A stretch of DNA of 64,000 nucleotides from Selaginella moellendorffii (GCF_000143415.4 NW_003314269.1:210401-274400); one strand, 5' to 3'. Numbered from the stretch's first letter, positions 8,344 to 53,788 are shown. Made by a program: numbers and translations. Notes: generated by a model not told the origin, from the letters alone.

Positions 8344-10107
8344 ATGGACGATTCCGGGGGAGGGAGGTCGAAATTTGTGAGGATTTGTGTGTTTTGCGGC
8401 AGTAGCAGCGGGAAGAAGACGAGCTACGGCGCCGCGGCTGCCGACCTCGGCCGCGAATTGGTAATGTGATGCTTCCTCTATTCCCTTGCGCATTGCATTT
8501 CTTTGATGAGCGAGTGCATGAGTGAATGAATGTGCGCCATTGTCTGCAAGGTTTCTTTTTTGGAGATCGGTGTGCTAGTTTCGAACGAATCACAGCAAGC
8601 TCTTTCTTTATTTTGGTGGGGGAGTTCTTGGATAGAATGGAAGGCTCTCCTTTTTAATTTTTTTTTTTTTTTTTCCCTCCTATTATTTTAGTCTCGGTTT
8701 AATCCCGTTGCATCGCTTGTGACTTCCACTTAGCTTATCATGCGACGACTTTTGCATTGCTCGACCACCACCATAGTTTACTTTTGCTTCCGCTTCTTTC
8801 TCTCATGTGTGTTCTTGCATTGTTTTTGGTTTGTTTTGCGTAGAAAGTGGTCTCTGTCCCGGTGTGGTGATGTTGTCCCTGGTTTCCTTACCTCGATACA
8901 TTCGCTCCTTATGAGCAAAACTATAGAGTGGTGCATAAAAGGCGATTCATTCCTTGTCTCCTGGAGTGCTTTCGGAGGATAATTTGCTCGGGCACGAGAG
9001 TGGCCAGGCTGTCATGGAATTGATATGTTTGGTGTGGTTGAGCCAGGAGGATGAGCTTGCATCTCTCTCTGAGCGCGTGAACTCGTTATTTTGGTGGTAC
9101 TTTATATTCCCAAGCTCTTGTCTCCTCACGCCCGATTTGTTGTATAAGTTTGTTGTGTGCGATCCCTTTTGTGGTTTGTTCTCTAACGAGCTTTGCGTGT
9201 TTTTGGCGTCTACAGGTAAAGAGGAAAATCGATCTGGTTTACGGAGGCGGCAACGTCGGACTGATGGGACTTATAGCGGAAGCGGTTTACGAAGGTGGCT
9301 GTCGCGTTACTGGGTACGTAGTGCTTTTTGTTGTGTTTTTTAACGTTCTTTTCGCCCCTCTGACCTTTTGGCTGTCCTCCTCGCAGAGTAATCCCAAAAG
9401 CGTTGATGCCTCACGAGGTAGTACAGGTTTACCATTTATTTCCATGTGGCTGGCTCGTTGGGACGGGCACTCATTCCCCAAAGCTCGTTTCATTTCCTTT
9501 CTAGATTTCAGGCAAGACGGTCGGAGAGGTGAAAGTCGTATCCGACATGCACCAGAGGAAAGCCGAGATGGCACGGCAGGCGGAGGCCTTTATCGCACTT
9601 CCGGGTATAGTTTTCTCGCGCTTTCTCGCGCTTTCTAGCCTGTGAAAAGTATTGACACATTCTTCGTTGTTGCCAGGCGGATATGGTACGCTAGAGGAGC
9701 TGCTGGAAATGATAACGTGGTCCCAGTTAGGCATTCATGATAAGCCTGTAAGAGATCTCGCAGTTTCTCACATGGAAAGTCTGATGTTTGTCGTCTCTCT
9801 TTCAGGTCGGCCTGCTAAACGTTGATGGTTACTACAATCCGCTGCTCGCCCTGTTTGACAAGGGCACGGAGGAAGGATTCATCAAGCCGTCGTCCAGGCA
9901 AATTGTCATTTCCGCATCGACTGCGGGCGAGCTCCTTGATAGACTAGAGGTAAGTTTTCCTCGGTTGTGTACAAGTTTCCTCGTGATCCTTTGTTTGTTT
10001 GGCAGGCTTATGTTCCAAACCACGTCTCGGTTGCTCCAAAAGAGACGTGGGAGATGGAACAATTGGGGTACTCGGCAGCATCGGCACCCCCAAGCCATAC
10101 GCTGTGA
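8344..10107 (+). CDS. LOG: LONELY GUY cytokinin riboside 5'-monophosphate phosphoribohydrolase (7 exons)
   Basis: [42 protein letters not shown]|[37 protein letters not shown]; canonical LOG exon layout. Confidence 0.95.
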
Positions 10108-10652
10108 GAAAATGTTTAAACCAATTCTTTTCTTTTTCAAGATGACTATTTGTTGACGCTTTGTAAACCCTGTGTTGACCCTTGAAAGGCTCAAGGCTTA
10201 ACTAAACCAAAGTTTATTTCATGTAGAAGAGAGACGCAATATTTTTCAAGTGATCAACCCTGGGAAGACTGGCCAGCCCAGGGACCTGAGGGATAGTCTT
10301 GTAGAGCCGATCCCGGGTTCGAACCCACCCGAAGAAGAGGGACCCTCAAATAAAACAAACTGATCACTCCTTTAATTTTCCCAAGCATGTTGGGGCGCGG
10401 ATTCGAACGCACGACTCTTTTGTACCTCACCAATTCCTGTAGTGGTGTCGCATTGTTCTTCGGCTTGTACATGGTTTAAATCTATTTAACTAGCGATTGA
10501 GTGGAAGAGCTTTTGGATTGTCTGTCTACGTGAAGAAACTTGCGGCAGATTTTGTTTCAAAGACAAAGGTCAGATTACAAAATTGGGACACGAGAGTTGC
10601 AGACACCAATGATGAACACGTACACTATCATCACTAAGTTCCATGGATGTTG

Positions 10653-12030
10653 CTAATGCAAGGTTGAAAAATTCATGCCGGATCCGGTGTGGCAAGAACC
10701 ACTGAAGACATTGGCCTTCTCCGCTGTTCGGAACACATCCGCATACACTAGGGCGATGTGCTCAGTCACAAACTCAGACCCCTCCTCCCCGTCGCCAACA
10801 ATGAAACTCGAATCAAACTTAACCATGTCCTCTATCGTCTGGCATGCCCGTCGCAGCGGCTTTCGCATCGCCAGCGCGTACTCAAGCGAGACCCTGATCC
10901 GCGCCATCTCACCCGATGACAAGAAAGTCTCAATCGCCGCCAGCCAGTCCTCGTCGTCCTCCAGGCATGCTACTACCTCTTCCGGACTAAGCTTCCTTTC
11001 CGGACCACGGCGGTGTAACCACGAACTTGGTAGTTCGCGGGCCACGAGCTTGCCGAGTGCATAGCTCCGGCAGCTGCTGTCCAAGACGGCCAACGAAAAC
11101 GGGTGCCTCCCTGTGTAATGCTCCACAAGCATTGAGCGCTTCGGGAATCGCGAGCAAAGGAGCCCGAGAACGCTCAGCTTGTCTCGGAAAGCAGTCAGCT
11201 CCTCCTGCCAACCAAGACTTTAGAAATCAAAACACAAACATCCACAAGAAAGAACAGCTCACCCCGTAGAAACCATCCTCCAGAAGCAAGAGTTCGCACG
11301 GACTATACCGCAGCTGCAAGTACTCCTGCGTCATTCCAACCCCACGAGACAGCCCCAAGACAGTCACTGCTGCAAGTGAGAACAAAGCAAACAAATCGCT
11401 GTGGAACATCTTACGCAGCTCCTTGGCGGGCACTGTCACTGGCATTTCCTCTCCAACAGCGTCAAGCATCTCCCACTGATCGACGACAAAGTAAAACTCG
11501 TCACCCGCGGCTGCTACTCGATCGCGGAAGAACTTGGCAATGTCTTGCATAGAACCCAAGCGATCTAACTCATCCAGCAGCTCGGCCTCCTTGCAAAACG
11601 TGAACCTCAGCGCGTTCTTCACGCACCCGCCCAAGTCCTGCTTAGCGATAGCAATCGCGAGGTCCCAGAGGCAAACAATCCTGCTGTTAGTCCCCGCGGC
11701 ATCGTGAATCCACCCGCAAGCCAAAGCCCTGAGCAAGCAACTCTTGCCGATTCCACACGGCCCAACGACTAGCAGCGTTTTTGTCTCTTTGGCTGCTTCC
11801 ACCAGGCTCTCAAGATCACGGCGACCAACAAACTGGAGATCTCCTCCGGGCATCGACGGCGCCTTGCCGATTCCCGGATATGGAATCACCGTGATCTCAC
11901 CGGCAGTGCACAGCTTACTCTTGTCGATTGCGGCGATGGCCTCGTGCGCCTTGACTGCCTTGGCCAGATCGTATTCCCCGCCATCGCTCCCACACACGCA
12001 GCGCAACCTCTTGACTGGGCGTCGCTGCAT
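10653..12030 (-). CDS. Crinkler (CRN)-associated-type AAA+/P-loop NTPase, copy 1 (about 439 aa; intron 11205-11262)
   Basis: Walker A VVGPCGIGKS, Walker B FYFVVDQ, then GFYG|EEL...HYTGRHP. The GTGAGC...GCAG intron joins the two track ORFs in frame. The P-loop call is firm; the CRN-type family call is from memory. Confidence 0.75.
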
Positions 12031-22252: not shown

Positions 22253-25200
22253 TCAGGGACCTTGGTTTACTGTTATGACCGTCTGACCATCCCTTTCAGT
22301 AAGCGGAACCAGGGAATCCAAACCATCTTCCCAAGGTCGCTGACCACGCGCATACCTTTTCGATCTCTGAGGTGAACCTTCAAGCGTGCTCTGAGAACTT
22401 AGAAGCTCCTCAAGCGTTTCACTGCCGAAACTTATGCCCCCAACCTCCGAATGATCTTGCACTTTAAAGCACCGTTTCAGAGCATCAACAAACTTCGAGA
22501 TGGTATTTTTCTGACCATCGCTGCCCTGACCTGCTTTGCTGGGCTGCGAGTCGAAGAATCTGAGCTTCCGGGAATTCAGGTTGTAAACTGCGTAGATGAA
22601 CGTGCAGACAGGACCTAAGCAGACCAAACCCCCGGGGACAGAAGTGGCGATCATGCTGGTCTGGTACTTTCCCAAAGGTGGCAATGCTGAGAATCCTGCG
22701 GCTCCAAATCCCACGAGGACGAAGATGATGGAGAGAACGAGCATGACTGCTGCGGCAATGAGTATTTGTCGGAGACGGCTAAGGAGTCTCAGGTTGAATT
22801 TGTCGGGAGAACGCAGGACCCCGGTGACTGCTGCCAGAGCACTGGCCATGGCGAAAAAGAAGGACAAACTGTTGGCAACCCAGAACACAACCACACCTGG
22901 TCTGTCGATGGACACATACTCCCTGTTGTCCTTGAACTTAAGCCTGTACCCCAGTGGCGGATTCAAGAAGCCTCCGAACGCGACACTGGCAATGAGAGCT
23001 GATCCAACCAGTATCGCGTTTAAGCCATCCACGAACATCTGCCGGTCCTTCTGCAAGCTCTTAGTGTAGCTGCTCCACTGGAGGTAGTTCATGACAGCAT
23101 CCTCCTCACCCATCCATTGTGCGTCCCAGTAAGGTGGCTGGCCGAAGTTATCGCAGATGTCTGGTTTGCAGCCTTTGCGAGACAAGGTAATCATTGTCTC
23201 GCGATCCTGTAAGATGGCAGCCCAGTGCAAAGCAGTCCGACCTGTCCGGCGGCCTGTGTCATTGGGATAATCTTTGATGAACTTTTCCGACCACTGTTTC
23301 AAACGTTGAGCCAGCCGTTTCCTCCTACGTCCTTCTTCGTTGTTATATCTATTTTCTCTCCAGATGTTGTCTTGCGAGATGGCCTGCAAGTCCTTGCTTC
23401 TGCCTTCTTCAATTTTTGCCTCCCAATAAGCCACAGGAACATCTTTCACCAGTTCACTCACGTCGTCGAAGGCACCCTTGTACTTGCTTGGCAAATTTCG
23501 ATATTTGTCTTCAAAGTTAATGTCCAGTTCCTTCCATACAGCTTCCTTGATCATGTCGGGTAATTCCTGGGTGAAGCACTTTGCCATGCAGGTTGCGAAG
23601 GTCTCCCTTCCCCGCAGCTCATCCTGTTCTCCATGCGAGAAAGCAATCTTAAAAGCTAACCTGAGTTGATCATTGATTCCTTTCACGTTGGTGTACTTCG
23701 TCATCACGAACTCCATCACAGGCTTTACTCTGTTGAACAGGCCCTCGCCAGCGAATTCTGTGCATCTGGTAGTGGCACTCAAAGCAGCCCATTCCAGTAG
23801 CCGTGATTCCTCCACAAGCTCATGAATAGAGTCCCCTGGCCATGTACCCAACTGAAGCTTCGCTAATAGCTCATTCGTGTGAATGCCTCCATATGCAACA
23901 GCAGACGCCAATATACCAGGCTCCAACACTCCATCGCTACTCAGGAAAATCCACGGCACCACATCAATTATGTCGGCTTGACCATGATCTTCAATACGCT
24001 GGAATGCCCGCTGCCAGTCCTTGTGACTTCCTGGAAACACCTGTATCTTTCTTTTCACATGTTCACGTATGAGTATGCCAAGACAGTCTCTTTTGCCACC
24101 CATAGCCGCCCAATGCCATGGCAGTCCTTTCTCAACCTTGTCCTCCGCATCTAGGTTGATGTCGTTAATTTTCAGCAACCACTCGAGTGCAACAGTGTTC
24201 CCACTCCAGGCAGCAAAGTGCAACGGAGTCAGACCTGCTTTAGTAGCTCGGTTCACTTCCAGGCCGTTCGGATCCAGCAACGCGAAGATATCTTTACCCC
24301 CTCCTCTAGCAGCAAAGTGCAATACTCCAGCTCCTGTCTCATCTTCTAACCCAAAATCAGCACCTTCGTCGCATAATTTTCGAGCAATGTCAGCTCTGCC
24401 TTGTCCAACAGCATAATGCAAAGGAGTGTGCCCACGCTTATTCTTTTTGTTAATCTTCGCACCTGCTTCCAGTAATGCTGTGACGATTGCGACTTCCCCT
24501 TGGCCAGGGCTCTCCCCTGCTACGATTTCAACATAATTCGAAGCAGCGAAATGAAGAGCAGTGTTGCCGAGTTCGTCTTGCTTCCGTACGTCAATCTTAC
24601 TTTTTTCATGGACGTTCAGCAGCGCTTTCACCAGACTTACATTTCCAAATTCGCTTGCAAGGTGTAGTGCGGTTTTGTCAGCATAAACATTGTGGATGTT
24701 CCAACCATATTTTAGAGCTTCCAGTTTGTCACTAAAATCTCCACCTTCTTGGATCCGCAGCTCCTCCAAGGCATCTGCCCAAAAATTTCAGATGTTAGAA
24801 GGACTTACTCTCTACGACTTACTCGTGATATCTTCCACTGAGCAAGCCTTTTGGAATCGTGGCTTCAAGGCTGTGTGCAGTAGCAGTTGAAAAACCGACT
24901 CATTTCCTTGTAACGCCAGGTGCAACGAAGACGCTCCCTCCTTGTCTTTTCGGCACGGATCAGCACCTTTGGCAATCAGCAGAACAATCATGTCCTGCTG
25001 CTCTTGTAGATGTTGTTCCACACGGGAAAGCTCCTGCTGCCATCCGCGTAACATTTTTAAGTCCAACTCCTTTAATTCCAACTTCTTTACCTCCAACTCG
25101 TTTATCATCTGCAGGTGCATTCTGACTGCAAGGTGCAGAAGAGTCTGGCCCTTCTCCAAGTCAGGGGTGTCCACCTCGGCTTCGCGGTAGAGCAACTCCT

Positions 25201-26014: not shown

Positions 26015-26086
26015 GCATAAGTAGTCCAACGGTTAAGATATTTGCCTTCCAAGCAATAGATCCGGGTTCGACTCCCGGCTGATGCA
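26015..26086 (+). pseudogene. Degenerate tRNA-Gly(TCC) copy
   Basis: Full length, but with mismatches in the acceptor stem (C5>A), D stem and anticodon stem; no T5 terminator. Confidence 0.85.
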
Positions 26087-26710: not shown

Positions 26711-26780
26711 ATCATAAGATAAGATTTGGATATACTGTCACCATAAATCCTTAAAATCTTTGGGGATAAATAAGGATAAA

Positions 26781-30735: not shown

Positions 30736-30739
30736 GATG

Positions 30740-33824: not shown

Positions 33825-33871
33825 TAGTTTAAAACCTAAAACCTTTTTGCCACGTGTCGGCTCTAGGGTTT

Positions 33872-37961: not shown

Positions 37962-38398
37962 ATGGTGCTTTGAGAATCATGGCCATTGAACCGTGCGGTG
38001 TTGCTCTCGGTATTTATCCTATCCTTTCCATCGCCAGCTGACAGCGTCACGCCATTGCATTGAATATAGTCAACGGTATGGTCAAAGTAGTCAAGGATCA
38101 GTCTGTGCTGGTGTAAGGGTGAGAAAGGACAGAGTTTAGGGTTTAGAGCGTGGAGCTCACTAACGAGCTTTTTGAAGTCAGCAAAATGGATGAGGAAGTT
38201 GCTAAGGTGTGGCAAATGGAAGTGGCTGGGCCCTTCAGAGTGGCAAACAAGATCTGGCGGAACATTGGCGAGAGGAAGAGGAGCAGCTGTGGAAGAGAAG
38301 AAAGAGGAGCTTCTTTTCGTCACGTCTAATGCTGTGTCATCTCTTCCATTTTGAGCTGTCGTGGTTAAGGATTTTGCCTCTTGCGCTCACTAGGGAGA

Positions 38399-38832: not shown

Positions 38833-41800
38833 TCAGGGACCTGGGTTTACTGTTATGACCGTCTGACCATCCGTTTTAGTCTGACCATCCGTCTGACCAT
38901 CCGTTTCAGTCTGACCATCCGTCTGATCATCCGGAACCAGGGAATCCAAACCATCTTCCCAAGGTCGCTGAGCACGCGCATACCTTTTCCGTCTCTGAGG
39001 TGAACCCTGAGAACTTAGAAGCTCTTCAAGCGTTTCACTGCCGAAACTCATGCCCCCAACCTCCGAATGATCTTGCAATTTAAAGCACCGTTTCAGAGCA
39101 TCAAGAAGCTTCGAGATGGTATTTTTCTGACCATCGCTCCCCTGACCTGCTTTGCTGGGCTGCGAGTCGAAGAACCTGAGCTTCCGGGAATTCAGGTTGT
39201 AAACTGCGTAGATGAACGTGCAGAGAGGAGCTAAGCAGACCAAACCCCCGGGGACAGAAGTGGCGATCATGCTGGTCGGGTACTTTCCCGAAGATGGCAA
39301 TTCTGAGAATCCTGCGGCTCCAAATGCCACGAGGACGAAGATGATGGAGATGACGAGCATGACTGCTGCGGCAATGAGTGTGTGTCGGAGACGGCGAAGG
39401 AGTCTCAGGTTGAATTTGTCGGGAGAAGGCAGGACCCCGGTGACTCCTGCCAGAGCACTGGCCATGGCGAAAAAGAAGGACAAACTGTTGGCAACCCAGA
39501 ACACAACCACACCTGGTCTGTCGACTGACACATACTCCCTGTCCTTGAACTTAAGTTTGTACCCCAGTGGCGGATTCAATAAGCCTCCGAACGTGACACT
39601 GGCAATGAGAGCTGATCCAACCAGTATCGCGTTTAAGGCATCCACGAACATCTGCCGGTCCTTGTGCAAGCTCTCAGTGTAGCTGCCCCACTTGAGGCAG
39701 TTCAGCATGACAGCATCCTCCTCACCCATCCATTGTGCGTCCCAGTAAGGTGGCTTGCCGAAGCTATCGCAGATGTCTGGTTTGCAGCCTTTGCGAGACA
39801 AGGTAATCATTGTCTCGCGCTCCTTGAAGATGGCAGCCCAGTGCAAAGCAGTCCGACCTGTCCGGTGGCCTGTGTCGTTGGGATAATCTTTGATGAACTT
39901 TTCCGACAACTGTTTCAAACGTTGAGCCAGCTGTTTCCTCCTACGTCCTTCTTCGTCGTTATATTTCTTTTTCGAGTTTTTCTCTTGCGAGATGGCCTTC
40001 AAGTCCTTGCTTCTGTCTTCTTCAAGTTTTGCCTCCCAATAAGCCACAGGAACATCTTTCGCCAGTTCACTCACGTCGTCGAAGGCATCCTTGTACTTGC
40101 TTGGCAATTTTCGATATTTGTCTTCAAAGATAATGTCCAGTTCCTTCCACACAGCTTCCTTGATCATATCGGGTAATTCCTGGGTGAAGCACTTTGCCAT
40201 GCAGGTTGCGAAGATCTCCCTTCCCCGCAGCTCATCCTGTTCTCCATGCGAGAAAGCAATCTTAAAAGCTAACCTGAGTTGATCATTGATTCCTTTCACG
40301 TTGGTGTACTTCTTCATCACGAACTCCATCACAGGCTTTACTCTGTTGAACAGGCCTTTGCCACCGAATTCTGTGCATCTGGTAGTGGCACTCAAAGCAG
40401 CCCATTCCAGTAGCCGTGATTCCTCCACAAGCTCATGAACAGAGTCCCCTGGCCCTGGCCCAGTTTCTCTTGTACCCAACTTCTTCGCTAAGAGCTCATT
40501 CGTTATACTGTCTCCATATGCAACAGCAGACGACAATATACCAGGCTCCAACACTCCATCGTTATGCAGGAACCGCCACGGCACCCAATCAATTATGTGG
40601 GCTTGACCATGATCTTCAATACGCTGGAATGCCCGGTGCCAGTCCTTGTGACTTCGTGGAAACACCCGTATCTTTCTTTTCACATGTTCACGTATGAGTA
40701 TGCCAAGACAGTCTCTGTTGCCACCCATAGCCGCCCAATGCCATGGCAGTCCTTTCTCAACCTTGTCCTCCGCATCTAGCTTGATGTCATTAATTTTCAG
40801 CAACCACTCGAGTGCAACACTGTTCCCATTCCAAGCAGCAAAGTGCAACGGAGTCAGACCTGCTTTAGTAGCTCGGTTCACTTCCAGGCCCTTCGGATCC
40901 AGCAACTCGAAGATATCTTTACCCCCTCCTCTAGCAGCAAAGTGCAATACTCCAGCTCCTGTCTCATCTTCTAAGCGAAAATCAGCACCTTTGTCGCGTA
41001 ATTTGCGAGCAATGTCAGCTCTCTTTTGTCCAACGGCAAAATGCAAAGGAGTGTGCCCAAGCTTATTCTTTTTGTTAATGTCCACACCTGCTTCCAGTAA
41101 TGCTTTGACGATTGCGACTTCCCCTTGGCCAGGGCTCTCCCCTGCTACGATTTCAACATAATTCGAAGCAGCGAAATGAAGAGCAGTGTTGCCGAGTTCG
41201 TCTTGCTTCCGTACGTCAATCTTACTTTTTCCATGGACGTTCAGCATCGCTTTCACCAGACTTACATTTCCAAATTCGCTTGCAAGGTGTAGTGCGGTTT
41301 TGTCAGCATAAACATTGTGGATGTTCCAACCATATTTTAGAGCTTCCAGTTTGTCACTAAAATCTCCACCTTCTTGGATCCGCAGCTCCTCCAAGGCATC
41401 TGCCCAAAAATTTCAGATGTTAGAAGGACTTACTCTCTACGACTTACTCGTGACATCTTCCACTGAGCAAGCCTTTTGGAATCGTGGCTTCAAGGCTGTG
41501 TGCAGTAGCAGTTGAAAAACCGACTCATTCCCTTGTAACGCCAGGTGCAACGAAGACGCTCCCTCCTTGTCTTTTCGGCACGGATCAGCACCTTTGGCAA
41601 TCAACAGAACAATCATGTCCTGCTGCTCTTGTAGATGTTGTTCCACACGGGAAAGCTCCTTATGCTGCTGTTGTAGATGTTGTTCCACACGGGAAAGCTC
41701 CTCGTGCTGCTGTTGTAGATGTCGGGAAAGCTCCTTATGCTGCTCTTGTAGCTCCTGCTGCTTTATGCGTAACTTCTTTAACTTCGACTCCTTTAACTCC

Positions 41801-42608
41801 AACTCCTTTATCATCTGCAGGACTGCAAGGTGCAGAGGAGTCTGGCCCTTCTCCAAGTCAGGGGTGTCCACCTGGGCTTCGCGGGAGAGCAACTCCTTCA
41901 GAACTTGAAGCTTGCCACGTATTTTGACTGCAATGTGTAACGGCGCGTCCCCCTTGATATTCTTTTGGCATGGATCCGCACCTTCCCGTAAGAGCGCTTG
42001 TATCACTTTCACGTTCTGTCGTTTCACAGCAGTGTGCAAGGGAGTATTGCCATCTTTATCAACGACATTAACTTGCTTTGCATCCCTCAGCTGGTTTAGC
42101 AGTTTTGAAACAATGGCAGGGTTTTCATTAGTGGCAGCTTCATGCAGAGCCGTGGTACCATTATTGGATGGATCTGCTTCTAAGATGTCTTTTACCTTAG
42201 TCGGAGACCATTTGAGCAGCCAGGATATTGCAGAAGTGTTCTCAGCCTCAATGGCGAGATACAGTGCAGTTGTGAAGATACCTTTCTGCCTATCATAGAC
42301 AGTATGACCATCCCAGTCTTTGTTATTGATCAGGTCCATCAATCTGTCTTCAGGGCTGCTATCCATGAGAATCGGTAGAAATTGATCTGAAGGAGCAAAG
42401 GTAATGTGTACACATAGTCCTGAAAGCATCACTTACGTGCTTCAACATGCGTGGAGGGCAGTATCTTTGGGGCTCGTTTCGTCGCAACGCTATTCGACAA
42501 GGAGGCGGCGGCGGGAGTGCCACCACCACCACCACCATCGCCGCCGCCAGACTGAGCGCTACCACCACCACCAGCACTACCATCACGCCCGTTCTCTTCT
42601 GGCACCAT
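38833..42608 (-). CDS. Ankyrin/coiled-coil/PGG-type TM protein copy 3, intact, 3 exons
   Basis: Gly-rich exon 1 (MVPEENGRDG...THVEA, GTAAGT donor), open exons 2 and 3, longest coiled-coil insert. Confidence 0.88.
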
Positions 42609-42958
42609 CAGCCTACGCTCCAACAAAAACGATGCAATTGATCAGGCACGATTTCTTGTGGCAGACAAGACCTGTAAAAGGGGTTGTTTAGATTCCACAT
42701 AGGACACTGAAACAGTGCGATACATTATCAGGCACCACGCAAGTTGCATGATCTTCTCGAATTTTTACGTACTATAATAATTCTAGTGGAGTGGAGTATT
42801 GATCACGACGCGAGTGCACATAACGGAAGGAATCGATCTCTCTCCTTTCCCAAATTTCAACAGCAGAGACTTTTAGTTTAGCATCAAGAAGGGTTTAACA
42901 AGTAAATCTACTATATCTACGAATATGCTCAAAGATTTGTTATTTTACGGCAAGATAG

Positions 42959-43223
42959 CCGAGTCCGAGAGTACAGCGGTCGCGGCGAAGCGAAGGGGAC
43001 GCCCATCGCCGAGGTGGGAGCATGGGCGCAGCCGGAACAGCAATGGCGAGCGTGACGGGCGTGGAAGAGCAAGGGATTCGGACAGGGATGAGGCTGCTGT
43101 GAGACGTAGGAGCGAGGACGATGGCAGGGATGGAGCTAAGCGTGGGGGGAGAGAGAGGTCTAGTGACAGGGAAGAGCGAGAGAAATGGGAAATGAGTCAA
43201 GGATGAAGCAAAGGAGCGCAGGA
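42959..43223 (+). pseudogene. DAWDLE exon-1 fragment (ATG lost)
   Basis: Matches 52358-52633, then jumps to tRNA-upstream sequence. Confidence 0.85.
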
Positions 43224-43263
43224 GTGTTGTTTCATTCAGGTTAATTTTACTTTAATGTAATAA

Positions 43264-43335
43264 GAATCAGTAGTCCAACGGTTAGGATAATTGCCTTCCA
43301 AGCAATAGACCCGGGTTCGACTCCCGGCTGATGCA
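43264..43335 (+). tRNA. tRNA-Gly(TCC) variant with an A2-G71 acceptor-stem mismatch
   Basis: Same as 12640-12711 except GAATCAG...CTGATGCA; TTTTT terminator retained. Confidence 0.75.
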
Positions 43336-44868: not shown

Positions 44869-47515
44869 ATGTTTGGCACTCTCGCCACCCACATTTTACT
44901 GCTGCTCGTCGCGATCATCGCGATCAATCTCTACCTAAGCTCGCTTCCGGCTTGGTTCTTCGTGACCCAAGTTAGCACTCGCTCCATCGCCGCCTTCCTC
45001 CACAATCTCACGCTCCACCCCCACGTCGCAGGGACGCCGCAGGGGTTTGCTACTGCCAAGTTCGTCGAGGAGAGATTCCGCGAGTTTGGGCTCTCGACGC
45101 GCACGGTCGACTACGAGGTACTCGTCTCGTATCCATTGAAGCGATCGTTGTCCGTGGTCTACCCAAGCAACTCGTCACTCAGCTTGGCTCTAGACGAAGA
45201 GACCGTGGATGGCGATGGCGATTCCTCTGGAGTCATTCCAACTTTCTTCGCTTACTCGCCGTCTGGGGAAGCTCTTGCCGAGGTGGTGTACGCAAACTAC
45301 GGCCAAAAATCCGATTTTGACGAGCTCAAGAGCCTGGGAGTGGAGGTGAGAGGGAGCGTGGTGATCGCCAGGCTTGGCAAGAGCTTTCGAGGGGATATCG
45401 TGTTTAACGCGCAGGAGGAAGGCGCGGTGGCCGTGGTTTTGTATCCGGATCCTCGAGACTACGCCACGAACGCTACCACTGAAGGCTACTATCCATTCTC
45501 GCGATGGTTGCCTCCAAGTGGAGTCCAGAGAGGCTCCGTGATCCAGGACCCCGGGGATCCTCTCACGCCGGGGTGGCCGAGTAGCAAGCTTTCCGAGAGA
45601 CTGGACGCTTCCAACTTGACAAGGCTGGGAGTTCCAGCGATCCCGGCGCTGCCAATCTCCGCTCGCGACGCTCTTCCAATCATCGAGGCGCTGGGAGGCC
45701 CTGTTGCTCCTGATTCCTGGCAAGGAGGACTTGCGGTGGACGCGTATCGAGCTGGGAAAGGACCTGTGAAACTTGATCTTCGCTACGAGGTAACTTCTGC
45801 AAAAAAAATATTAAAGCTTTTGAGCACTACGTACTTCCTGGCAGGCTAACCTGACCACTGCGACAATTCGTAACGTTTTTGGAATCATAGAAGGCTCTGA
45901 GAAAGATAGGTGAGTTTTCGAGCTTCAAATTAGTCTTGTTTTCTCTCGTATTTTTTCTAAAGCTTTGACACATAGATATGTGCTTCTTTGGAATCACCGA
46001 GACGCTTGGACGTATGGAGCCGGCGATCCAAACAGCGGAACTGCCTGCCTTTTGGAGGTAAAGCTTTCATGTTATTCCTCAAAGAAACTTTTCATGTTTT
46101 TGCGAGTTTTTAGATAGCTCGCATCTTTGGACAGTTTCTGAGAAAACCAGCGAGAACAATCGTATTTTGCAGCTGGGATGCCGAAGAGTACAGCCTGGTA
46201 ATCCTTTGTATCTCTATTACCTTCGTGTTTACTCATAAAAATTTCCTCTCTTAATAGACTGGTTCTACAGAGTGGGTCGAGGACAATTTGGCCATGCTTA
46301 AGGCTCGAGCGGTGGCTTATTTAAACGTGGATGAAGCAGTAACAGGCAGTTCTTTCTCAGCGTCTGCTACGCCTCAGCTTGACAACCTTTTATTCGAAGT
46401 CACCAAAATGGTATGCAAATCTTACCATTTCTTTTTGCAGCTCATGGCATTTTGGTTCTCTCAAGGTGAAAGATCCAGACTCAAATGGAACCATATTTGA
46501 CTCGTGGTGTGGAAAATCAAACGATTGTGTAAGAGACAAAAAATTTATCATTATCATCTCCTCCGCTCCGTATTAATGGTTTGATGGACTCAGGTCGGGA
46601 GGCTGGGCGGTGGTAGCTCCGACTACGCTCCATTCTTGCAGCACGCAGGAATTCCCTCCACCAGCATGACGTACGAAGAAAAAAACTCAGATTTTCCCGT
46701 GTATCATTCACTCTATGACAATTACAACTGGATGAAAAACTTTGGAGACCCTGAGTTTCATCGCCATGCAACAGGTGAAACTTTGCTTTTGATTCCTTTT
46801 TATAAGATTTCGAGGCTTTGGTACTAGTGGTGAAAGTCTGGGGACTGCTTGCGAGGCGCTTGGCCATGGACACGATCTTGCCTTTCAACTATGTCTCGTA
46901 TGCAAACGTGTTCGAGGTACTAGCGATTATACCATTGCTTTTCATGAGTTGGATTGTTTCTTAAAGGTCGCTGTAAAGGATTTGGAGGCCAGGTTCCTGC
47001 TTATTTCGGGTCATCCAGTAAGCTTTTCTCTTTTTTCTTCTTTCGCTTGGTCTCATCGGTTTTTCCAGGTTAATATACTTAGCCTCAGCAAGTCACACGA
47101 CGTAAATTTCTTCCCACTTCATTCTGCGGTGGATCAACTTCGTGAACTTGCGTCCAAGATCCCTTCTTTCACTGCGCCCAGAAGTAAAAATGATATTTTG
47201 ATGCTTGGAGAGCGCTGTTTTCTAGATGGCGAAGGCCTTCCAGGGAAGCCATGGTTCAAACACTTGGTGAGTGCATTTTATCTGATTGTAAGAGTTTTGA
47301 TGTTGTGAATTGTGTAGATCTATGGCCCAACTCAAACAAATGTCTATGGTACCTCGACATTCCCTGCTATTGCGGACGTTATATCGAAGATGGCTGTGGG
47401 TGAGGACAAAGAAGAGCTTAAAGCTTTAAAACAAGACTTGCAACATGAAATATGGAGAGCTTCGAGAGCTATCCAGTGTGCCGCGAATGTCATAAAAGGT
47501 GATATATTTTCCTAA
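44869..47515 (+). CDS. AMP1/LAMP1-like glutamate carboxypeptidase II, copy 4, full-length ORF
   Basis: No stop or frameshift seen; N-terminal signal anchor; Zn ligands intact, but GNHRDAW reads WNHRDAW. Confidence 0.85.
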
Positions 47516-48358: not shown

Positions 48359-51300
48359 TCAGGGACCTGGGTTTACTGTTATGACCGTCTGACCATCCGT
48401 TTTAGTCTGACCATCCGTCTGACCATCCGTTTCAGTCTTACCATCCGGAACCAGGGAATCCAAACCATCTTCCCAAGGTCGCTGACCACGCGCATACCTT
48501 TTCCGTCTCTGAGGTGAACCCTGAGAGCTTAGAAGCTCTTCAAGCGTTTGACTGCCGAAACTTATGCCCCCAACCTCCGAATGATCTTGCACTTTAAAGC
48601 ACCGTTTCAGAGCATCAACAAGCTTCGAGATGGTATTTTTCTGACCGTCGCTCCCCTGACCTGCTTTGCTGAGCTGCGAGTCGAAGAACCTGAGCTTCCG
48701 GGAATTCAGGTTGTAAACTGCGTAGATGAACGTGCAGAGAGGAGCTAAGCAGACCAAACCCCCGGGGACAGCAGTGGCGATCATGCTGGTCGGGTACTTT
48801 CCCGAAGGTGGCAATGCTGAGAATCCTGCGGCTCCAAATCCCACGAGGACGAAGATGATGGAGATGACGAGCATGACTGCTGCGGCAATGAGTATGTGTC
48901 GGAGACGGCGAAGGAGTGTCAGGTTGAATTTGTCGGGAGAAGGCAGGACCCCGGTGACTCCTGCCAGAGCACTGGCCATGGCGAAAAAGAAGGACAAACT
49001 GTTGGCAACCCAGAACACAACCACACCTGGTCTGTCGATGGACACATACTCCCTGTCCTTGAACTTAAGTTTGTACCCCAGTGGCGGATTCAATAAGCCT
49101 CCGAACGTGACACTGGCAATGAGAGCTGATCCAACCAGTATTGCGTTTAAGCCATCCACGAACATCTGCCGGTCCTTGTGCAAGCTCTCAGTATAGCTGC
49201 CCCACTTGAGGCAGTTCAGCATGACAGCATCCTTCTCACCCACCCATTGTGCGTCCCAATAAGGTGGCTTGCCGAAGTTATCGCAGACGTCTGGTTTGCA
49301 GCCTTTGCGAGACAAGGTAACCACTGTCTCGCGCTCCATGAAGATGGCAGCCCAGTGCAAAGCAGTCCGACCTGTCCGGTGGCCTGTGTCGTTGGGATAA
49401 TCTTTGATGAACTTTTCCGACAACTGTTTCAAACGTTGAGCCAGCCGTTTCCTCCTATGTCCTTCTTCGTCGTTATATTTCTTTTCCAAGATGTTCTCTT
49501 GCGAGATGGCCTCCAAGTCCTTGCTTCTGTCTTCTTCGAGTTTTGCCTCCCAATAAGCCACAGGCACATCTTTCACCAGCCCACTCACGTCGTCGAAGGC
49601 ATCCTTGTACTTGCTTGGCAATTTTCGATATTTGTCTTCAAAGTTAATGTCCAGTTTCTTCCACACAGCTTCCTTGATCATATCGGGTAATTCCTGGGTG
49701 AAGCACTTTGCCATGCAGGTTGCGAAGGTCTCCCTTCCCCGCACCTCATCCTGTTCTCCATGCAAGAAAGCAATCTTAAAAGCTAACCTGAGTTGATCAT
49801 TGATTCCTTTCACGTTGGTGTACTTCTTCATCATGAACTCCATCACAGGCTTTACTCTGTTGAACAGGCCCTTGCCACCGAATTCTGTGCTTCTGGTAGT
49901 GGCACTCAAAGCAGCCCATTCCAGTAGCCGTGATTCCTCCACAAGGTCATGAACAGAGTCCTCTGGCCCTGACCCAGTTTCTCTTGTACCCAACTTCTTC
50001 GCTAAGAGCCCATTCGTTATACTGTCTCCATATGCAACAGCAGACGACAATATACCAGGCTCCAACACTCCATCCCTGCCCAGGAAAGTCCACGGCACCC
50101 AATCAATTATGTCGGCTTGACCATGATCTTCAATACGCTGGAATGCCCGCTGCCAGTCCTCGTGACTTCCTGGAAACACCTGTATCTTTCTTTTCACATG
50201 TTCACATATGAGTATGTCAAGACAGTCTATGTTGCCACCCATAGCCGCCCAATGCCATGGCAGTCCTTTCTCAACCTTGTCCTCCGCATCTAGCTTGATG
50301 TCGTTAATTTTCAGCAACCACTCGAGTGCAACAGTGTTCCCATTCCAGGCAGCAAAGTGCAACGGAGTCAGACCTGCTTTAGTAGCTCGGTTCACTTCCG
50401 GGCCGTTCGGATCCAGCAACGCGAAGATATCTTTACCCCCTCCTCTAGCAGCAAAGTGCAATACTCCAGCTCCTGTCTCATCTTCTAAGCGAAAATCAGC
50501 ACCTTTGTCGCGTAATTTGCGAGCAATGTCAGCTCTGGCTTGTCCAACAGCATAATGCAAAGGAGTGTGCCCAAGCTTATTCTTTTTGTCAATCTCCGCA
50601 CCTGCTTCCAGTAATGCTGTGACGATTGTGACTTCCCCTTGGCCAACAGCAAGATGCAAAGGGCTCTCCCCTGCTACGATTTCCAAACACCCAACACAAT
50701 TCGAAGCAGCGAAATGAAGAGCAGTGTTGCCGAGTTCGTCTTGCTTCCGTACGTCAATTTTACTTTTTTCATGGAGGTTCAGCAGCGCTTTCACCAGACT
50801 TACATTTCCAAATTCACTTGCAAGGTGTAGTGCGGTTTTGTCAGCATAAACATTGTGGATGTTCCAACCATATTTTAGAGCTTCCAGTTTGTCACTAAAA
50901 TCTCCACCTTCTTGGATCCGCAGCTCCTCCAAGGCATCTGCCCAAAAATTTCAGATGTTAGAAGGACTTACTCTCTACGACTTACTCGTGATATGTTCCA
51001 CTGAGCAAGCCTTTTGGAATCGTGGCTTCAAGGCTGTGTGCAGTAGCAGTTGAAAAACCGACTCATTCCCTTGTAACGCCAGGTGCAACGAAGACGCTCC
51101 CTCCTTGTCTTTTCGGCACGGATCAGCACCTTTGGCAATCAACAGAACAATCATGTCCTGCTGCTCGTGTAGATGTTGTTCCACAAGGGAAAGCTCCTCT
51201 TCTAGATATCGTTCCACACGGGAAAGCTCCTGCTGCCTTATGTGTAACTCCTCCTTTAACTCCAACTCCTTTATCATCTGCAGGACTGCAAGGTGCAGAA

Positions 51301-52079
51301 GAGTCTGGCCCTTCTCCAAGTCAGGGGTGTCCACCTCGGCTACGTGGTAGAGCAACTTCTTCAGAACTTCAAGGTTGGCACCTTTTTTTACTGCAATGTG
51401 TAACGGCGCGTCCCCCTTGATATTCTTTTGGCATGGATCCGCATCATTCCATAAGAGCGCTTGTATCACTTTCAGGTTCTGTCGTTTCACAGCAGTGTGC
51501 AAGGGAGTATTGCCATCTTTATCAACGACATTAACTTGCTTTGCATCCCTCAGCTCTTGTAGCAGTTGTTTAACAATGGCAGGGTTTTCAACAGTGGCAG
51601 CTCCATGTAGAGCGGTGCTACCATTGGATGAATCTGCTTCTAAGATGTCGTTTACCTTAGTGATCTCAGACCATTCGAGCAACCAGGATATTGCAGAAGT
51701 GTTCTCAGCCTCCGCAGCGAGATATAGTGCAGTTGTGAAGATACATTTCTGCCTGTCATAGACAGTATGACCATCCCAGTCTTTGTTATTGATCAGGTCC
51801 ATCAATCTTTCTTCAGGGCTGCTATCCATGAGAATCGGTCGAAATTGATCTGAAGGAGCAAAGGTAATGTCTACATACACAGTCCTGAAAGCATCACTTA
51901 CGTGCTTCAACATGCGTTGAGGACAGGATCTTTGGGGCTCGTTTCGTCGCAACGCTATTCGACAAGGAGGGGGCAGCGGGAGCGGGAGCGCCACCACCAC
52001 CACCACCATCGCCTCCGCCAGACTGAGCGCTACCAGCACCACCACCACTACCACCACGCGCGTTCTCTGCTGACGCCAT
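48359..52079 (-). CDS. Ankyrin/coiled-coil/PGG-type TM protein copy 4, intact, 3 exons
   Basis: Exon 1 MASAENARGG..., open exons 2 and 3, TATATATA about 50 bp upstream. Confidence 0.9.
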
Positions 52080-52353
52080 CAACCTACGCTCCAACAAAAA
52101 CGATGAAATTGATCAGGCACGATTTCTTGTATATATATGCCTAGATGCCTTGCTGGAAACGTAAGTTGCAGGCAAGACCTTAGATTCCACATAGGACACT
52201 GAAACAATGCGATGCAATTCTTTCTTTATCCGGCACCAAGGCCTACAGGGAATCTATTGGACGCAAATTTATGCGCATTGCAAGCCCTAAAAAGAAAATC
52301 TACTCTATCTACGAATATTCTCGAAGATGCGTTATTTTAGGGCAAGATAGAGC

Positions 52354-53788
52354 ATGGCGAGTCCAAGAGTACAGCGGTCGCGGCGGAGCGAAGGGGACGC
52401 CCATCGCCGAGGTAGGGAGCATGGGCGCAGCCGGAACAGAGATGGCGAGCGTGACGGGCGTGGAAGAGCAAGGGATTCGGACAGGGATGAGGCTGCTGTG
52501 AGAGGTAGGAGCGAGGACGATGGCAGGGATGGAGCTAGGCGTGGGGGGAGAGAGAGGTCTAGTGACAGGGAAGAGCGAGAGAAATGGGAAACGAGAACTA
52601 GAGTCAAGGATGAAGCAAAGGAGCCCAGGAGTGTAGAGAATGTGTTTAAAAGGGAGCGTGGCGATGAAGCGGCGATGGAGGATTTGAGTAGCAAGCGTGT
52701 CAAAGTGGAGCCGGGGGACATTGAGAACGAGGTGTCTGGTGATTTCTATCGGGCCTTTTTCTCTTTCGATCTTGCGAATGCTTCGAATGCTTACTGGGTG
52801 TTTTGTGCGTGTAGGATAGAGATGGGGATGAAGCGAAAGAGATCCCTCGCAGGTATGGCTTTGAGTTTTCTCTTGTTTCTTTTGGTTCTTTACCGTGTTT
52901 GGATTGTAGCAGCAAGGACGATAGTATAGCGCTCATGGAGCAAGCAGAAGCTGCTTTGGAGGCCAAGGAACAAGCAAAGGTAGGACAGATCCAAAGAGCT
53001 GCGCTGCGATGCTTCATCCTTGTTTCAATGCAGGAAAAGGCCTCGTTTGAGTACACTGGGAAGCTCGCAGCTGAGACCAACAAAGTCAGTGGTAAGATCT
53101 CCTTTGTTTTTCCTTTGTTTCTGCTTTCTGATATCTAGTTTCCAACAGGTATTGCGTTGCAGTTTACGGAGCCTCCCGAGGCTCGCCAGCCCAGTGTCCG
53201 ATGGAGGCTCTACGTTTTCAAAGACGGAGCGCCTTTGGAAGGTAAAGCTTTTGTATTTGTTCTCGATTTTCATGTGAATGATCTGAGTGATCTTCCCGAG
53301 CAGACCCGCTTTTCATACATCGGCAGAGTTGCTATCTGTTTGGACGAGAAAGAAAGGTTGCAGACATTCCGATCGATCATCCCTCTTGCAGCAAGCAGCA
53401 CGCGGTCATCCAGTACAGGCTCATCGAGAAAGAAGTGGACGGACTTATGTCGAAAAAGATCAGGTAACGAAATCTCAAGGCTAGCGCTACATCTTTCTCA
53501 TTTCCCTTCATCGTTCCAGGCCCTACGTCATGGATCTGGGAAGTACCAACAAAACCTTCTTGAATGTAAGTCGAAGCCATTGTTTCGTTTCAAACTGTCC
53601 CTGACTTGCTTTCGCAGGGAGAAGCGATCGAGCCTCAACGTTACTACGAACTTTTTGAGAAGGACACTCTCAAGTTTGGCAACAGCAGGTTGGTTTGGCT
53701 TTGTTTCATCATGTAGATCTCGTTTTTAATCGTTTTTCCTCGTCTTTCCAGCCGCGAGTACGTTCTTCTTCACGAAAACTCAGCATAG
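52354..53788 (+). CDS. DDL: FHA-domain protein DAWDLE/SNIP1 (multi-exon)
   Basis: R/D/E/S-rich N-terminus; GKLAAETNKV, EPPEARQPSVRWRLYVFK, HRQSCYLFGRERKVADIPIDHPSCSKQHAVIQYR, PYVMDLGSTN, SREYVLLHENSA*. Confidence 0.95.

What the first reader, a model, noticed from the sequence alone, without database searches (positions are those of the whole stretch)
8367..53224. Co-amplified cassette: CRN-type NTPase + tRNA-Gly + CRM + M28 peptidase + ACD6-like ankyrin-TM
Seen: unrelated genes amplified together 2-5 times across about 45 kb between single-copy housekeeping flanks. The ankyrin-TM gene keeps long open frames in 3 of 4 copies and the NTPase in 2 of 2, while tRNA, CRM, peptidase, DDL and LOG copies mostly decay. 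Inference: a non-NLR birth-and-death locus, possibly defence-related, driven by the ankyrin-TM gene, with a Crinkler-like NTPase as candidate partner or decoy and the other genes as passengers. This is the best candidate for an undescribed system here, but functional linkage is unproven.
Basis: partly seen in the sequence, partly recalled or inferred. Interest (0 to 1): 0.75.

Follow-up and report, generated by a model that had tools for sequence, protein, structure and literature searches.

The report
Nested tandem duplication with fast-evolving ankyrin-membrane genes
A 45-kb stretch of the spikemoss genome is a block of five neighbouring genes copied several times by ordinary tandem duplication; only the ankyrin-membrane gene (a relative of plant immune genes such as ACD6) changes its protein unusually fast, and nothing ties it to the ATPase gene beside it.

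Summary

At least four tandem duplications with different breakpoints explain all of it. The outermost breakpoints lie inside LOG and DDL. The extra LOG and DDL "copies" are therefore breakpoint fragments, not decayed genes.

- ANK-PGG: 3 of 4 open (1121-1161 aa).
- NTPase: 2 of 2 open.
- CRM gene: 3 of 4 open.
- PA/M28 peptidase: 2 of 4 open.
- tRNA-Gly: 3 of 4 recognisable.

So the contrast "ANK and NTPase kept, the rest decays" fails.

What does stand out is the ANK-PGG gene. Its dN/dS is 1.0-1.3, against 0.2-0.5 for its neighbours at similar dS. It has no stops (neutral simulation P = 0.0003-0.003) and only in-frame indels.

The NTPase belongs to a lycophyte/fern Crinkler/RHS-like NTPase-nuclease family but lacks the nuclease part. 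It was duplicated only once, as a passenger. No evidence links it to the ANK gene.

Verdict: a new member of a known kind, a tandem ANK-TM cluster. This scan holds about 200 notes on Crinkler-type NTPases elsewhere in this genome, and none on this locus.

The parts
8344..10000 (+). LOG (cytokinin-activating 'lysine decarboxylase-like') gene, single complete copy. Its last exons (9646-9960) lie inside duplicated segment A. The end coordinate is approximate.
   Evidence: PF03641 hits at 9646-9822 (43 bits) and 9785-10153 (31 bits). The N-terminal exon was read.
9641..12599 (.). Segment A copy 1: LOG 3' exons plus the NTPase gene. It matches 30777-33704 at 93.7%.
   Evidence: self-blastn
10653..12030 (-). 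NTPase gene copy A1, 439 aa. Exon 1 is 11263-12030, the intron 11205-11262, exon 2 10653-11204. Walker A and Walker B are intact.
   Evidence: The splice site matches annotated protein P0001. nSTAND1 scores 29 bits against a 27.1 cut-off.
12640..12711 (+). tRNA-Gly(UCC), the best copy
   Evidence: ARAGORN; Rfam 68.5 bits
12987..14153 (+). CRM-domain gene copy B1, 3 exons, 337 aa, open
14257..16898 (+). PA/M28/TFR_dimer peptidase copy B1, a pseudogene. It has a stop at codon 283, an 11-nt deletion in exon 2, a 1-nt deletion in exon 6, a lost donor after exon 7 and an 11-nt deletion in exon 11.
17460..18587 (+). CRM copy B2. It lacks the ATG and the first 13 codons because the duplication breakpoint falls inside exon 1. 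The rest is open.
18700..21371 (+). Peptidase copy B2, 11 exons, 707 aa, open. It is the only copy with the full exon 9.
   Evidence: PA domain; TFR_dimer.
22253..25666 (-). ANK-PGG gene C1, 1121 aa, open. Exon 1 is 24823-25666 and exon 2 is 22253-24774. Only 64 nt of native upstream sequence remain.
26015..26086 (+). tRNA-Gly(UCC) copy 2, with several substitutions including an acceptor-stem mismatch
   Evidence: 59.2 bits
26329..26709 (+). 380-nt remnant of the peptidase PA exon, all that is left of a B unit
26779..29510 (-). ANK copy C2, a pseudogene. It has 10-, 22- and 7-nt indels and a first stop after 240 codons. Its 3' end is cut off inside the PGG region.
30123..30735 (+). Fragment y: the 5' part of the DDL gene (matches 52551-53223). 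It ends at the junction of the largest duplication.
30739..30776 (+). 38-nt filler at the junction, copied from LOG exon 1 (matches 8366-8403, 94.7%)
31791..33165 (-). NTPase gene copy A2, 438 aa, open. Exon 1 is 32401-33165 and exon 2 is 31791-32342.
33782..33825 (+). Dead tRNA-Gly copy, with a 29-nt deletion of its 3' half (approximate coordinates)
   Evidence: ARAGORN and Rfam do not call it.
34068..35226 (+). CRM copy B3, 336 aa, open
35339..37991 (+). Peptidase copy B3, a pseudogene. A 1-nt insertion and a 24-nt deletion at the start of exon 1 shift the frame from codon 3.
38833..42366 (-). ANK-PGG gene C3, 1161 aa, open
42896..43227 (+). Fragment z: the DDL start codon region (matches 52288-52634), at the junction of the 9.55-kb duplication
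43264..43335 (+). tRNA-Gly(UCC) copy 4, with one acceptor-stem mismatch
   Evidence: 63.5 bits
43599..44765 (+). CRM copy B4, 337 aa, open
44869..47515 (+). Peptidase copy B4, 694 aa, open. It carries the 78-nt in-frame deletion in exon 9 (shared with B1 and B3) and a Gly-to-Trp change beside the conserved H-R-D motif.
48359..51829 (-). ANK-PGG gene C4, 1140 aa, open. It is divergently arranged with the complete DDL gene.
52354..53713 (+). DAWDLE-like FHA gene ('DDL'), the complete copy. It begins with an Arg/Ser/Asp-rich first exon, and the FHA domain starts at 53291. The end coordinate is approximate.
   Evidence: PF00498
17012..17463 (+). x element, also at 21603-22053, 38190-38633 and 47736-48191. 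It lies between the peptidase and ANK 3' ends and holds an old DDL-like fragment.

Best explanation
This is a young, nested tandem segmental duplication in the nuclear genome of Selaginella moellendorffii, not a functional cassette.

The ancestral block lay between LOG and a DAWDLE-like FHA gene. It held five unrelated genes:
- an NTPase-only member of a lycophyte/fern Crinkler/RHS-like family;
- tRNA-Gly(UCC);
- a single-CRM-domain gene;
- an AMP1/GCPII-like M28B peptidase gene;
- a long-form ankyrin-PGG (ANK-TM) gene.

At least four unequal-recombination events with different breakpoints copied overlapping parts of this block. Gene conversion then mixed the copies. Genes were co-amplified because they are neighbours (shown).

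Among them, only the ANK-PGG paralogues combine a preserved 3.4-kb reading frame with fast amino-acid change (shown). I read this as diversifying paralogues of the ANK-TM family. That family includes ACD6 and Lr14a, which are membrane proteins acting in immune signalling through calcium influx. The functional reading is inferred from family membership only.

The NTPase, CRM and peptidase copies are passengers. Several of them remain intact under purifying selection.
For: Structure:
- Four junction types are seen. DDL-5' joins LOG-3' at 30735/30777, with a 38-nt LOG exon-1 filler. DDL-5' joins the tRNA flank at 43227/43243. ANK upstream sequence joins the tRNA flank at 25730/25733. The x element joins CRM codon 14 at about 17460.
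- All repeats are direct, with no TIRs and no gaps.
- The pair of copies that is 100% identical changes from one 300-nt window to the next, which indicates gene conversion.

Gene state:
- ANK is open in C1, C3 and C4, and all of about 15 coding indels are multiples of 3. C2 has 10-, 22- and 7-nt indels.
- CRM is open in 3 of 4 copies.
- The peptidase is open in 2 of 4 copies.
- The NTPase is open in 2 of 2 copies.

Selection:
- ANK has dN/dS 1.0-1.3 at dS 0.037-0.061.
- The NTPase has 0.51, CRM 0.21-0.56 and the peptidase 0.25, at dS 0.018-0.048.
- ANK differs from the pooled neighbours with Fisher P = 2e-5 to 4e-5.
- In neutral simulation, the chance of gaining no new stop is 0.0003-0.003.

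Family:
- Ank plus PGG (PF13962) score 34-38 bits against a 24.1 cut-off.
- Four hydrophobic segments follow the PGG start.
- Homologues annotated as PGG-domain proteins occur in Selaginella, a fern and liverworts.
- The role of the ANK-TM family is taken from PMC7878491 and bioRxiv 10.1101/2021.01.25.428077.
Against: - dN/dS for ANK is not significantly above 1 (P about 0.27-0.30). Positive selection is therefore inferred from the combination with frame preservation, not shown directly.
- The amino-acid changes are spread along the protein rather than focused on one surface.
- Gene conversion blurs both the ages and the order of events.
- No expression, population or functional data could be consulted.
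- ANK copy C1 keeps only 64 nt of its native upstream region.
- These proteins are 1121-1161 aa, far longer than ACD6, so function may differ.
- The array has not been validated with long reads.
Confidence: 0.72

Rival explanations
1. One reading: a functional non-NLR defence cassette. The ANK-TM gene is the selected driver of amplification, and the Crinkler-like NTPase is its partner or decoy.
For: - Both genes keep open frames in every copy except ANK C2.
- ANK evolves fast.
- The NTPase family is of Crinkler/RHS conflict type.
- The window NTPase has lost the nuclease module, yet both copies are intact with dN/dS 0.51. A domesticated regulator or decoy could look like this.
Against: - The NTPase was copied in only one of at least four events, giving 2 copies against 4 for ANK.
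- CRM is retained equally well, 3 of 4 copies, under purifying selection.
- One event copied only CRM plus peptidase.
- The closest paralogues of the two families lie on scaffolds of different lengths, so the pairing is not seen to recur.
- NTPase dN/dS is not significantly below 1 (P = 0.067).
Confidence: 0.07
2. Plain neutral aftermath of recent duplication. The ANK copies are simply under relaxed constraint (dN/dS about 1) and have not yet been hit by a disabling mutation, or gene conversion from one good copy keeps erasing such hits.
For: - dN/dS is statistically indistinguishable from 1.
- Changes are spread over the whole protein.
- Gene-conversion tracts are evident.
- One ANK copy (C2) is already dead.
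Against: - Neutral simulation gives P = 0.0003-0.003 for the absence of stops.
- All coding indels in C1, C3 and C4 are in frame. C2 and the non-coding flanks carry out-of-frame indels.
- Neighbours of the same age show clear purifying selection.
Confidence: 0.15
3. Assembly artefact: haplotypes or collapsed reads mis-joined into an apparent tandem array.
For: - The published S. moellendorffii assembly holds two haplotypes (from my own knowledge of the genome paper, not checked here).
- The only database match to the NTPase (P0001) is identical to neither window copy: 98% and 95% over exon 1.
Against: - There are no gaps inside the array.
- Copies differ by 2-9% and by many private indels.
- The four junctions are specific and different, one of them with a templated filler.
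Confidence: 0.04
4. Transposon-mediated gene capture (Helitron or Pack-MULE type) that carried unrelated gene pieces together.
For: Unrelated genes and gene fragments are repeated together.
Against: - The copies are whole genes with introns, in the same order as the flanks.
- Breakpoints lie inside the flanking LOG and DDL genes.
- There are no terminal inverted repeats.
- No transposase or reverse-transcriptase domain appeared among the ORFs sent to Pfam. Not every ORF in the array was scanned.
Confidence: 0.02

Closest known systems
Plant ANK-TM (ankyrin + PGG) family: ACD6, BDA1 and ITN1 of Arabidopsis, Lr14a of wheat
   Same: - N-terminal ankyrin repeats.
- A C-terminal PGG domain with 4-5 membrane helices.
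- A multigene family that forms local clusters. The Lr14a locus is also shaped by tandem repeats and unequal crossing-over (PMC7878491).
   Different: - The proteins are 1121-1161 aa, against about 670 aa for ACD6.
- They have a second ankyrin block, a length-variable coiled-coil insert and a roughly 270-aa region with no known domain.
- The P-G-G motif itself is altered.
- The host is a lycophyte, and no functional data exist.
Crinkler/RHS-type (CR) NTPase-HTH-REase modules (Zhang et al. 2016, as summarised in PMC5289972)
   Same: - The window NTPase belongs to a family (E = 5e-49 to the nearest full-length member) whose long members add a conserved alpha/beta module and a HeH-like tail.
- That module's nearest language-model neighbours are Euglenozoa, oomycete and fungal clusters, including RHSP.
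   Different: - The window genes stop just before that module.
- They have no room for an N-terminal header domain.
- The nuclease fold of the long relatives was not confirmed by fold search.
NLR resistance-gene clusters evolving by birth and death
   Same: - Tandem array.
- Unequal crossing-over and gene conversion.
- A mix of intact and dead paralogues.
- High dN/dS.
   Different: - No NB-ARC or LRR domains.
- The P-loop protein here is small, separate and lacks sensor repeats.
Other recent tandem duplications noted in this genome by this scan (kinase/dirigent/PGG-like triplication; truncated CAMTA array)
   Same: - Same organism.
- Same pattern: neighbouring genes copied together, with part of the copies broken.
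   Different: Here one gene family shows a marked excess of amino-acid change relative to its co-duplicated neighbours.

Membership tests
ANK-TM / PGG-domain family (ACD6, ITN1, BDA1, Lr14a) | Several N-terminal ankyrin repeats | tested here: met
   Ank, Ank_2 and Ank_4 hits with E 1e-28 to 1e-42 on both exons of all copies
ANK-TM / PGG-domain family (ACD6, ITN1, BDA1, Lr14a) | PGG domain (PF13962) above the gathering score | tested here: met
   33.7-38 bits against a 24.1 cut-off in C1, C3 and C4. It is absent from truncated C2.
ANK-TM / PGG-domain family (ACD6, ITN1, BDA1, Lr14a) | Multi-pass membrane C-terminus (five helices reported for ACD6) | tested here: met
   Four hydrophobic segments; the third is long enough to hold two helices
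ANK-TM / PGG-domain family (ACD6, ITN1, BDA1, Lr14a) | Sequence homology to annotated plant PGG-domain proteins | tested here: met
   E 4e-60 to 8e-22 to Selaginella, Adiantum, Riccia and Calypogeia proteins that carry Ank plus PGG
ANK-TM / PGG-domain family (ACD6, ITN1, BDA1, Lr14a) | Role in immunity or calcium influx | not testable with these tools
   Known only for the angiosperm members
Crinkler/RHS-type NTPase-REase effector module | P-loop NTPase followed by a helical/HTH domain | tested here: met
   Walker A and Walker B are present. The model (pLDDT 86) matches AAA+/STAND/ORC and archaeal ATPase folds. The nearest atlas clusters are ATPase_2 and nSTAND1.
Crinkler/RHS-type NTPase-REase effector module | C-terminal restriction-endonuclease-fold toxin domain | tested here: not met
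   Relatives of 680-830 aa have it. The window genes cover only their residues of about 20-410, and no remnant lies downstream.
Crinkler/RHS-type NTPase-REase effector module | N-terminal header (ubiquitin-like) trafficking domain | tested here: not met
   Only about 20 disordered residues precede the NTPase module
Crinkler/RHS-type NTPase-REase effector module | The long relatives' C-terminal module is really REase/RHSP-like | tested here: inconclusive
   It has conserved E, D, Q-x-T and H positions and an alpha-beta-beta-beta-alpha-beta order. Atlas neighbours are Euglenozoa, Oomycota and RHSP clusters at 0.92-0.95. Whole-protein Foldseek returned only AAA+ hits.
STAND NTPases (nSTAND1, PF20703) | Pfam score above the gathering cut-off | tested here: met
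   28.9-29.2 bits against 27.1, which is marginal and covers only profile positions 15-148 of 379
STAND NTPases (nSTAND1, PF20703) | C-terminal sensor repeats (TPR, WD40, LRR) | tested here: not met
   No repeat domain in the 439-aa protein
NLR immune receptors | NB-ARC domain plus LRR | tested here: not met
   No NB-ARC or LRR hit among the ORFs of the array that were scanned
M28B peptidases (GCPII / AMP1-like) | PA domain and transferrin-receptor-like dimerisation domain | tested here: met
   PF02225 at 37 bits; PF04253 at 32-36 bits
M28B peptidases (GCPII / AMP1-like) | M28 catalytic domain with zinc ligands | tested here: inconclusive
   The two exon-sized pieces sent (27 and 60 aa) gave no Pfam hit. 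The conserved H-R-D ... D-P-N-S-G stretch is visible in the spliced translation. The joined model was not searched.
CRM (CRS1/YhbY) domain proteins | PF01985 domain | tested here: met
   53-54 bits against a cut-off of 27

The most novel reading that the evidence does not exclude
A lycophyte non-NLR immune locus in which long-form ANK-PGG membrane proteins diversify as sensors or channels. A Crinkler/RHS-family NTPase that has shed its nuclease would have been domesticated as their regulator, guardee or decoy. The pair would be kept together by the same recurrent duplications.
Probability: 0.05. Interest if true: 0.7.

Novelty: new member of a known kind. Interest (0 to 1): 0.32.

Why it matters
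ANK-TM genes such as ACD6 and Lr14a are an emerging non-NLR class of plant immune components. Their evolution outside seed plants is hardly described; a full-text search for the four terms ankyrin, transmembrane, Selaginella and ACD6 together found no paper.

This locus gives an internally controlled example. Genes copied by the same events show purifying selection, while the ANK-PGG paralogues change four to six times faster yet stay open. This suggests that birth-and-death dynamics of this family already operate in a lycophyte.

It also corrects a tempting over-reading. Co-amplification here reflects linkage, not function. Apparent "decay" of CRM and peptidase copies was largely an effect of unmodelled introns.

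Tried and rejected
- Pfam scans of the longest ORFs in both flanks found nothing, because the real exons are short. Shorter in-frame pieces then identified LOG, FHA and ArfGAP.
Annotated gene neighbourhoods, and recurrence of the ANK/NTPase pairing, could therefore not be examined.
I redid the exon mapping from coordinates only.
- The word search with NTPase exon 1 found only one protein. The exhaustive HMMER search was used because the family was otherwise open.
- A profile search of the PDB with the NTPase family gave only generic P-loop matches.
- A PDB search with the ANK C-terminus gave only ankyrin/DARPin hits and no ACD6-like structure.
- Foldseek with the 781-aa relative was dominated by its AAA+ half, so it did not test the nuclease fold.
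- The search of earlier findings by sequence and by place (near) was blank.
- Literature searches joining Selaginella with Crinkler or ACD6 found no paper.
- Transposon capture was considered and rejected: no inverted repeats.
Exons were searched separately by reference. Joined coding sequences were used only inside local scripts, for codon counts, hydropathy and the stop-codon simulation.

Full report
**Identity of the sequence.** The window is nuclear DNA of the spikemoss Selaginella moellendorffii. The only word-search hit to the NTPase exon is SELMODRAFT_402883, at 98% identity. Earlier notes of this scan name the same genome. The genes have short introns of 50-65 nt.

**Is the repeat structure real?** Yes.
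- A self-blastn map and the repeat finder show only direct repeats from 9641 to 53223.
- There are no inverted repeats of 40 nt or more.
- There is no run of N inside the array; the only one is at 63847-63946.
- Segment A (NTPase) occurs twice: 9641-12599 and 30777-33704, at 93.7% identity.
- Segment B (CRM gene plus peptidase gene, + strand) occurs four times: 13024-16998, 17460-21550, 34040-38101 and 43571-47642, at 97-98% pairwise identity.
- Segment C (ankyrin-PGG gene, - strand) occurs four times: 21555-25730, 26779-30124, 38180-42659 and 47688-52430, at 91-95% identity.
- A tRNA-Gly(UCC) precedes B or C in four places. Three copies are still recognised. One has a 29-nt deletion.

**What bounds the array.**
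- On the left is a LOG gene. Pfam PF03641 hits lie at 9646-9822 and 9785-10153, and the N-terminal exon is near 8344.
It starts at 52354, with the FHA domain at 53291.
- An ArfGAP gene and a PPR gene follow.
- The array begins inside a LOG intron at 9641 and ends inside DDL at 53223.
- At 30735-30777 the DDL 5' part is joined to the LOG 3' part through a 38-nt filler copied from LOG exon 1 (matches 8366-8403). This is the signature of a tandem duplication whose breakpoints lie in the two flanking genes.
- Three further junctions have other breakpoints:
  - DDL 5' joined to the tRNA flank at 43227/43243. This made the 9.55-kb repeat 34040-41702 / 43571-51231.
  - ANK upstream sequence joined to the tRNA flank at 25730/25733.
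  - The x element joined to codon 14 of CRM at about 17460. This 4.44-kb duplication copied only CRM and the peptidase.
- So at least four events are needed. The extra LOG piece (30888-31199) and the DDL pieces (30123-30735, 42896-43227) are segment ends, never whole genes.
- The x element, which lies between the peptidase and ANK 3' ends in every unit, also holds an older DDL-like fragment, 66-80% identical to 52860-53252. Each ANK gene is therefore bracketed by direct DDL-derived repeats, a ready substrate for unequal crossing-over.
- The pair of copies that is 100% identical changes from one 300-nt window to the next. This shows gene conversion, so the order and age of events cannot be read from identities.

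**State of each gene copy.** I modelled introns from conserved GT-AG sites and frame continuity, then projected the exons onto all copies.
- ANK-PGG has two exons, a 48-nt phase-1 intron, and a start codon conserved in all four copies.
  - C1, C3 and C4 are open, at 1121, 1161 and 1140 aa.
  - C2 has 10-, 22- and 7-nt indels and a stop after 240 codons. It also lacks almost the whole PGG region.
- The NTPase has two exons, and the splice is confirmed by annotated protein P0001. Both copies are open, at 439 and 438 aa.
- CRM has three exons.
  - B1, B3 and B4 are open, at 337, 336 and 337 aa.
  - B2 lost its ATG and 13 codons at a breakpoint.
  - The 1-nt indel that makes the frames look broken lies in intron 2.
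- The peptidase has eleven exons.
  - B2 is open at 707 aa.
  - B4 is open at 694 aa. It has an in-frame 78-nt deletion in exon 9 and a Gly-to-Trp change next to the H-R-D motif.
  - B1 has five disabling lesions.
  - B3 is frameshifted at codon 3.
- The tRNA copies score 68.5, 63.5 and 59.2 bits, and the fourth copy is dead.

It holds only in part for the peptidase and the tRNA.

**Selection.** Nei-Gojobori counts were made exon by exon for ANK and the NTPase, and on coding sequences joined inside a local script for CRM and the peptidase.

| Gene | dN/dS | dS |
|---|---|---|
| ANK | 1.21, 1.01, 1.28 | 0.037-0.061 |
| NTPase | 0.51 | 0.044 |
| CRM | 0.21-0.56 | 0.018-0.037 |
| Peptidase (B2 vs B4) | 0.25 | 0.032 |

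- dS is similar across genes, so they share the same duplications.
- ANK dN (0.047-0.065) is four to six times that of its neighbours. Its ratio of non-synonymous to synonymous changes differs from the pooled neighbours at P = 2e-5 to 4e-5.
- ANK dN/dS is not significantly above 1 (P about 0.27-0.30).
- The frames are nevertheless protected. Random substitutions in the observed number left the frame free of stops in only 0.03-0.3% of simulations.
- All of about 15 coding indels in C1, C3 and C4 are multiples of three. C2 and the upstream non-coding sequence carry out-of-frame indels.
- Changes are spread along the protein. Codons 240-360 are nearly invariant even at synonymous sites, which points to a conversion tract.
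- I conclude that the three ANK genes are functional and diversifying. Positive selection is inferred, not proven.

**What the ANK gene is.**
- Pfam finds many ankyrin repeats and a PGG domain above threshold.
- Four hydrophobic segments follow.
- The C-terminal third matches PGG-domain proteins of Selaginella, the fern Adiantum and liverworts.
- A 1091-aa Selaginella paralogue aligns over the whole length at 32% identity. The long form is therefore an old lineage-specific subfamily.
- The family includes ACD6, which stimulates calcium influx, has five membrane helices and binds small peptides on its ankyrin repeats. It also includes the wheat race-specific resistance gene Lr14a, whose locus is also shaped by tandem repeats and unequal crossing-over.
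- The differences here are the size, an extra ankyrin block, a length-variable coiled-coil insert, a domain-free stretch of about 270 aa, and an altered P-G-G motif.

**What the NTPase is.**
- Pfam gives a marginal nSTAND1 hit.
- The exhaustive HMMER search found only 23 related clusters. Of the ten cluster representatives whose source I looked up, nine are from S. moellendorffii or Adiantum capillus-veneris and one is a giant fish protein that matches only a short stretch. Most relatives are 680-830 aa.
- The window genes match only residues of about 20-410 of these relatives. No remnant of the remainder lies downstream, where the LOG 3' end is only about 700 nt away.
- The model of P0001 (pLDDT 86, pTM 0.87) resembles AAA+/STAND-type ATPases: mS29, ORC/Cdc6, archaeal Walker ATPases, CED-4 and NOD2. 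Atlas neighbours are ATPase_2 and nSTAND1 clusters.
- In the long relatives, the missing part is a conserved alpha/beta module with E, D, Q-x-T and H positions, followed by a HeH-like tail.
- That module's nearest atlas clusters come from Euglenozoa, oomycetes and fungi, and include RHSP. This is the taxonomic pattern of Crinkler/RHS modules, which are reported to occur in land plants too (PMC5289972).
- The label "Crinkler-type" therefore fits the family. The window genes, however, are NTPase-only derivatives with neither header nor nuclease. The nuclease fold itself was not confirmed.

**Is the NTPase linked to ANK?** Nothing says so.
- It was copied once, in the largest event.
- The nearest paralogues of the two families are recorded on scaffolds of different lengths. 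This is weak evidence against a recurrent pairing.

**Limits.**
- No read, expression or population data were available.
- Joined spliced models were not sent to any search or fold tool. They were used only in local scripts.

**Verdict.** This is an ordinary nested tandem duplication whose gene content reflects linkage. Its one notable feature is a small cluster of rapidly diversifying long-form ANK-TM genes in a lycophyte.

Noticed in passing
window 10653-12030 and 31791-33165; proteins P0011-P0041: The NTPase belongs to a family found almost only in Selaginella and the fern Adiantum. Full-length members carry a conserved C-terminal alpha/beta module (E, D, Q-x-T, H) and a HeH-like tail. The module's language-model neighbours are Euglenozoa, oomycete and fungal clusters, including RHSP. 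The window genes are NTPase-only versions that are still intact in both copies.
   Followed up: partly
window 17012-17463, 21603-22053, 38190-38633, 47736-48191 versus 52860-53252: The spacer between the peptidase and ANK 3' ends contains an old, 66-80% identical copy of DDL 5' sequence. Each ANK gene thus sits between direct DDL-derived repeats that could drive unequal crossing-over.
   Followed up: partly
window 30739-30776: The junction of the largest duplication holds a 38-nt filler copied from LOG exon 1 (8366-8403). It implies either a templated insertion or a later 1.2-kb deletion in the copied LOG fragment.
   Followed up: partly
ANK exon 1 (aligned codons about 183-240) and the C-terminus (aligned codons about 1146-1161) of C1, C3 and C4: A glutamine/glutamate/leucine-rich coiled-coil-like insert inside the first ankyrin block varies by in-frame indels of 9-81 nt. 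A short Asp-Gly-Gln-Thr-type repeat at the C-terminus varies by 12-48 nt between copies.
   Followed up: no
B copies, 300-nt windows of alignment: The pair of copies that is 100% identical changes from window to window: B1=B3, B2=B4, B1=B4, B2=B3. This is a gene-conversion mosaic that blurs the order of the duplications.
   Followed up: partly
window 25666-25733: ANK copy C1 keeps only 64 nt of its native upstream region before the junction with the tRNA flank, yet its 1121-codon frame is intact. It must use a new promoter if it is expressed.
   Followed up: no
window 51829-52354: The complete DDL gene and ANK copy C4 are divergently arranged about 520 nt apart, so they may share a bidirectional promoter. 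Each ANK duplication carried a piece of the DDL 5' end with it.
   Followed up: no
ANK coding sequences C1, C3, C4: Transitions and transversions are about equal among the ANK copies (87:98, 83:90, 75:69), an unusually low ratio.
   Followed up: no
window 63847-63946: A 100-nt run of N (assembly gap) lies outside the array.
   Followed up: no
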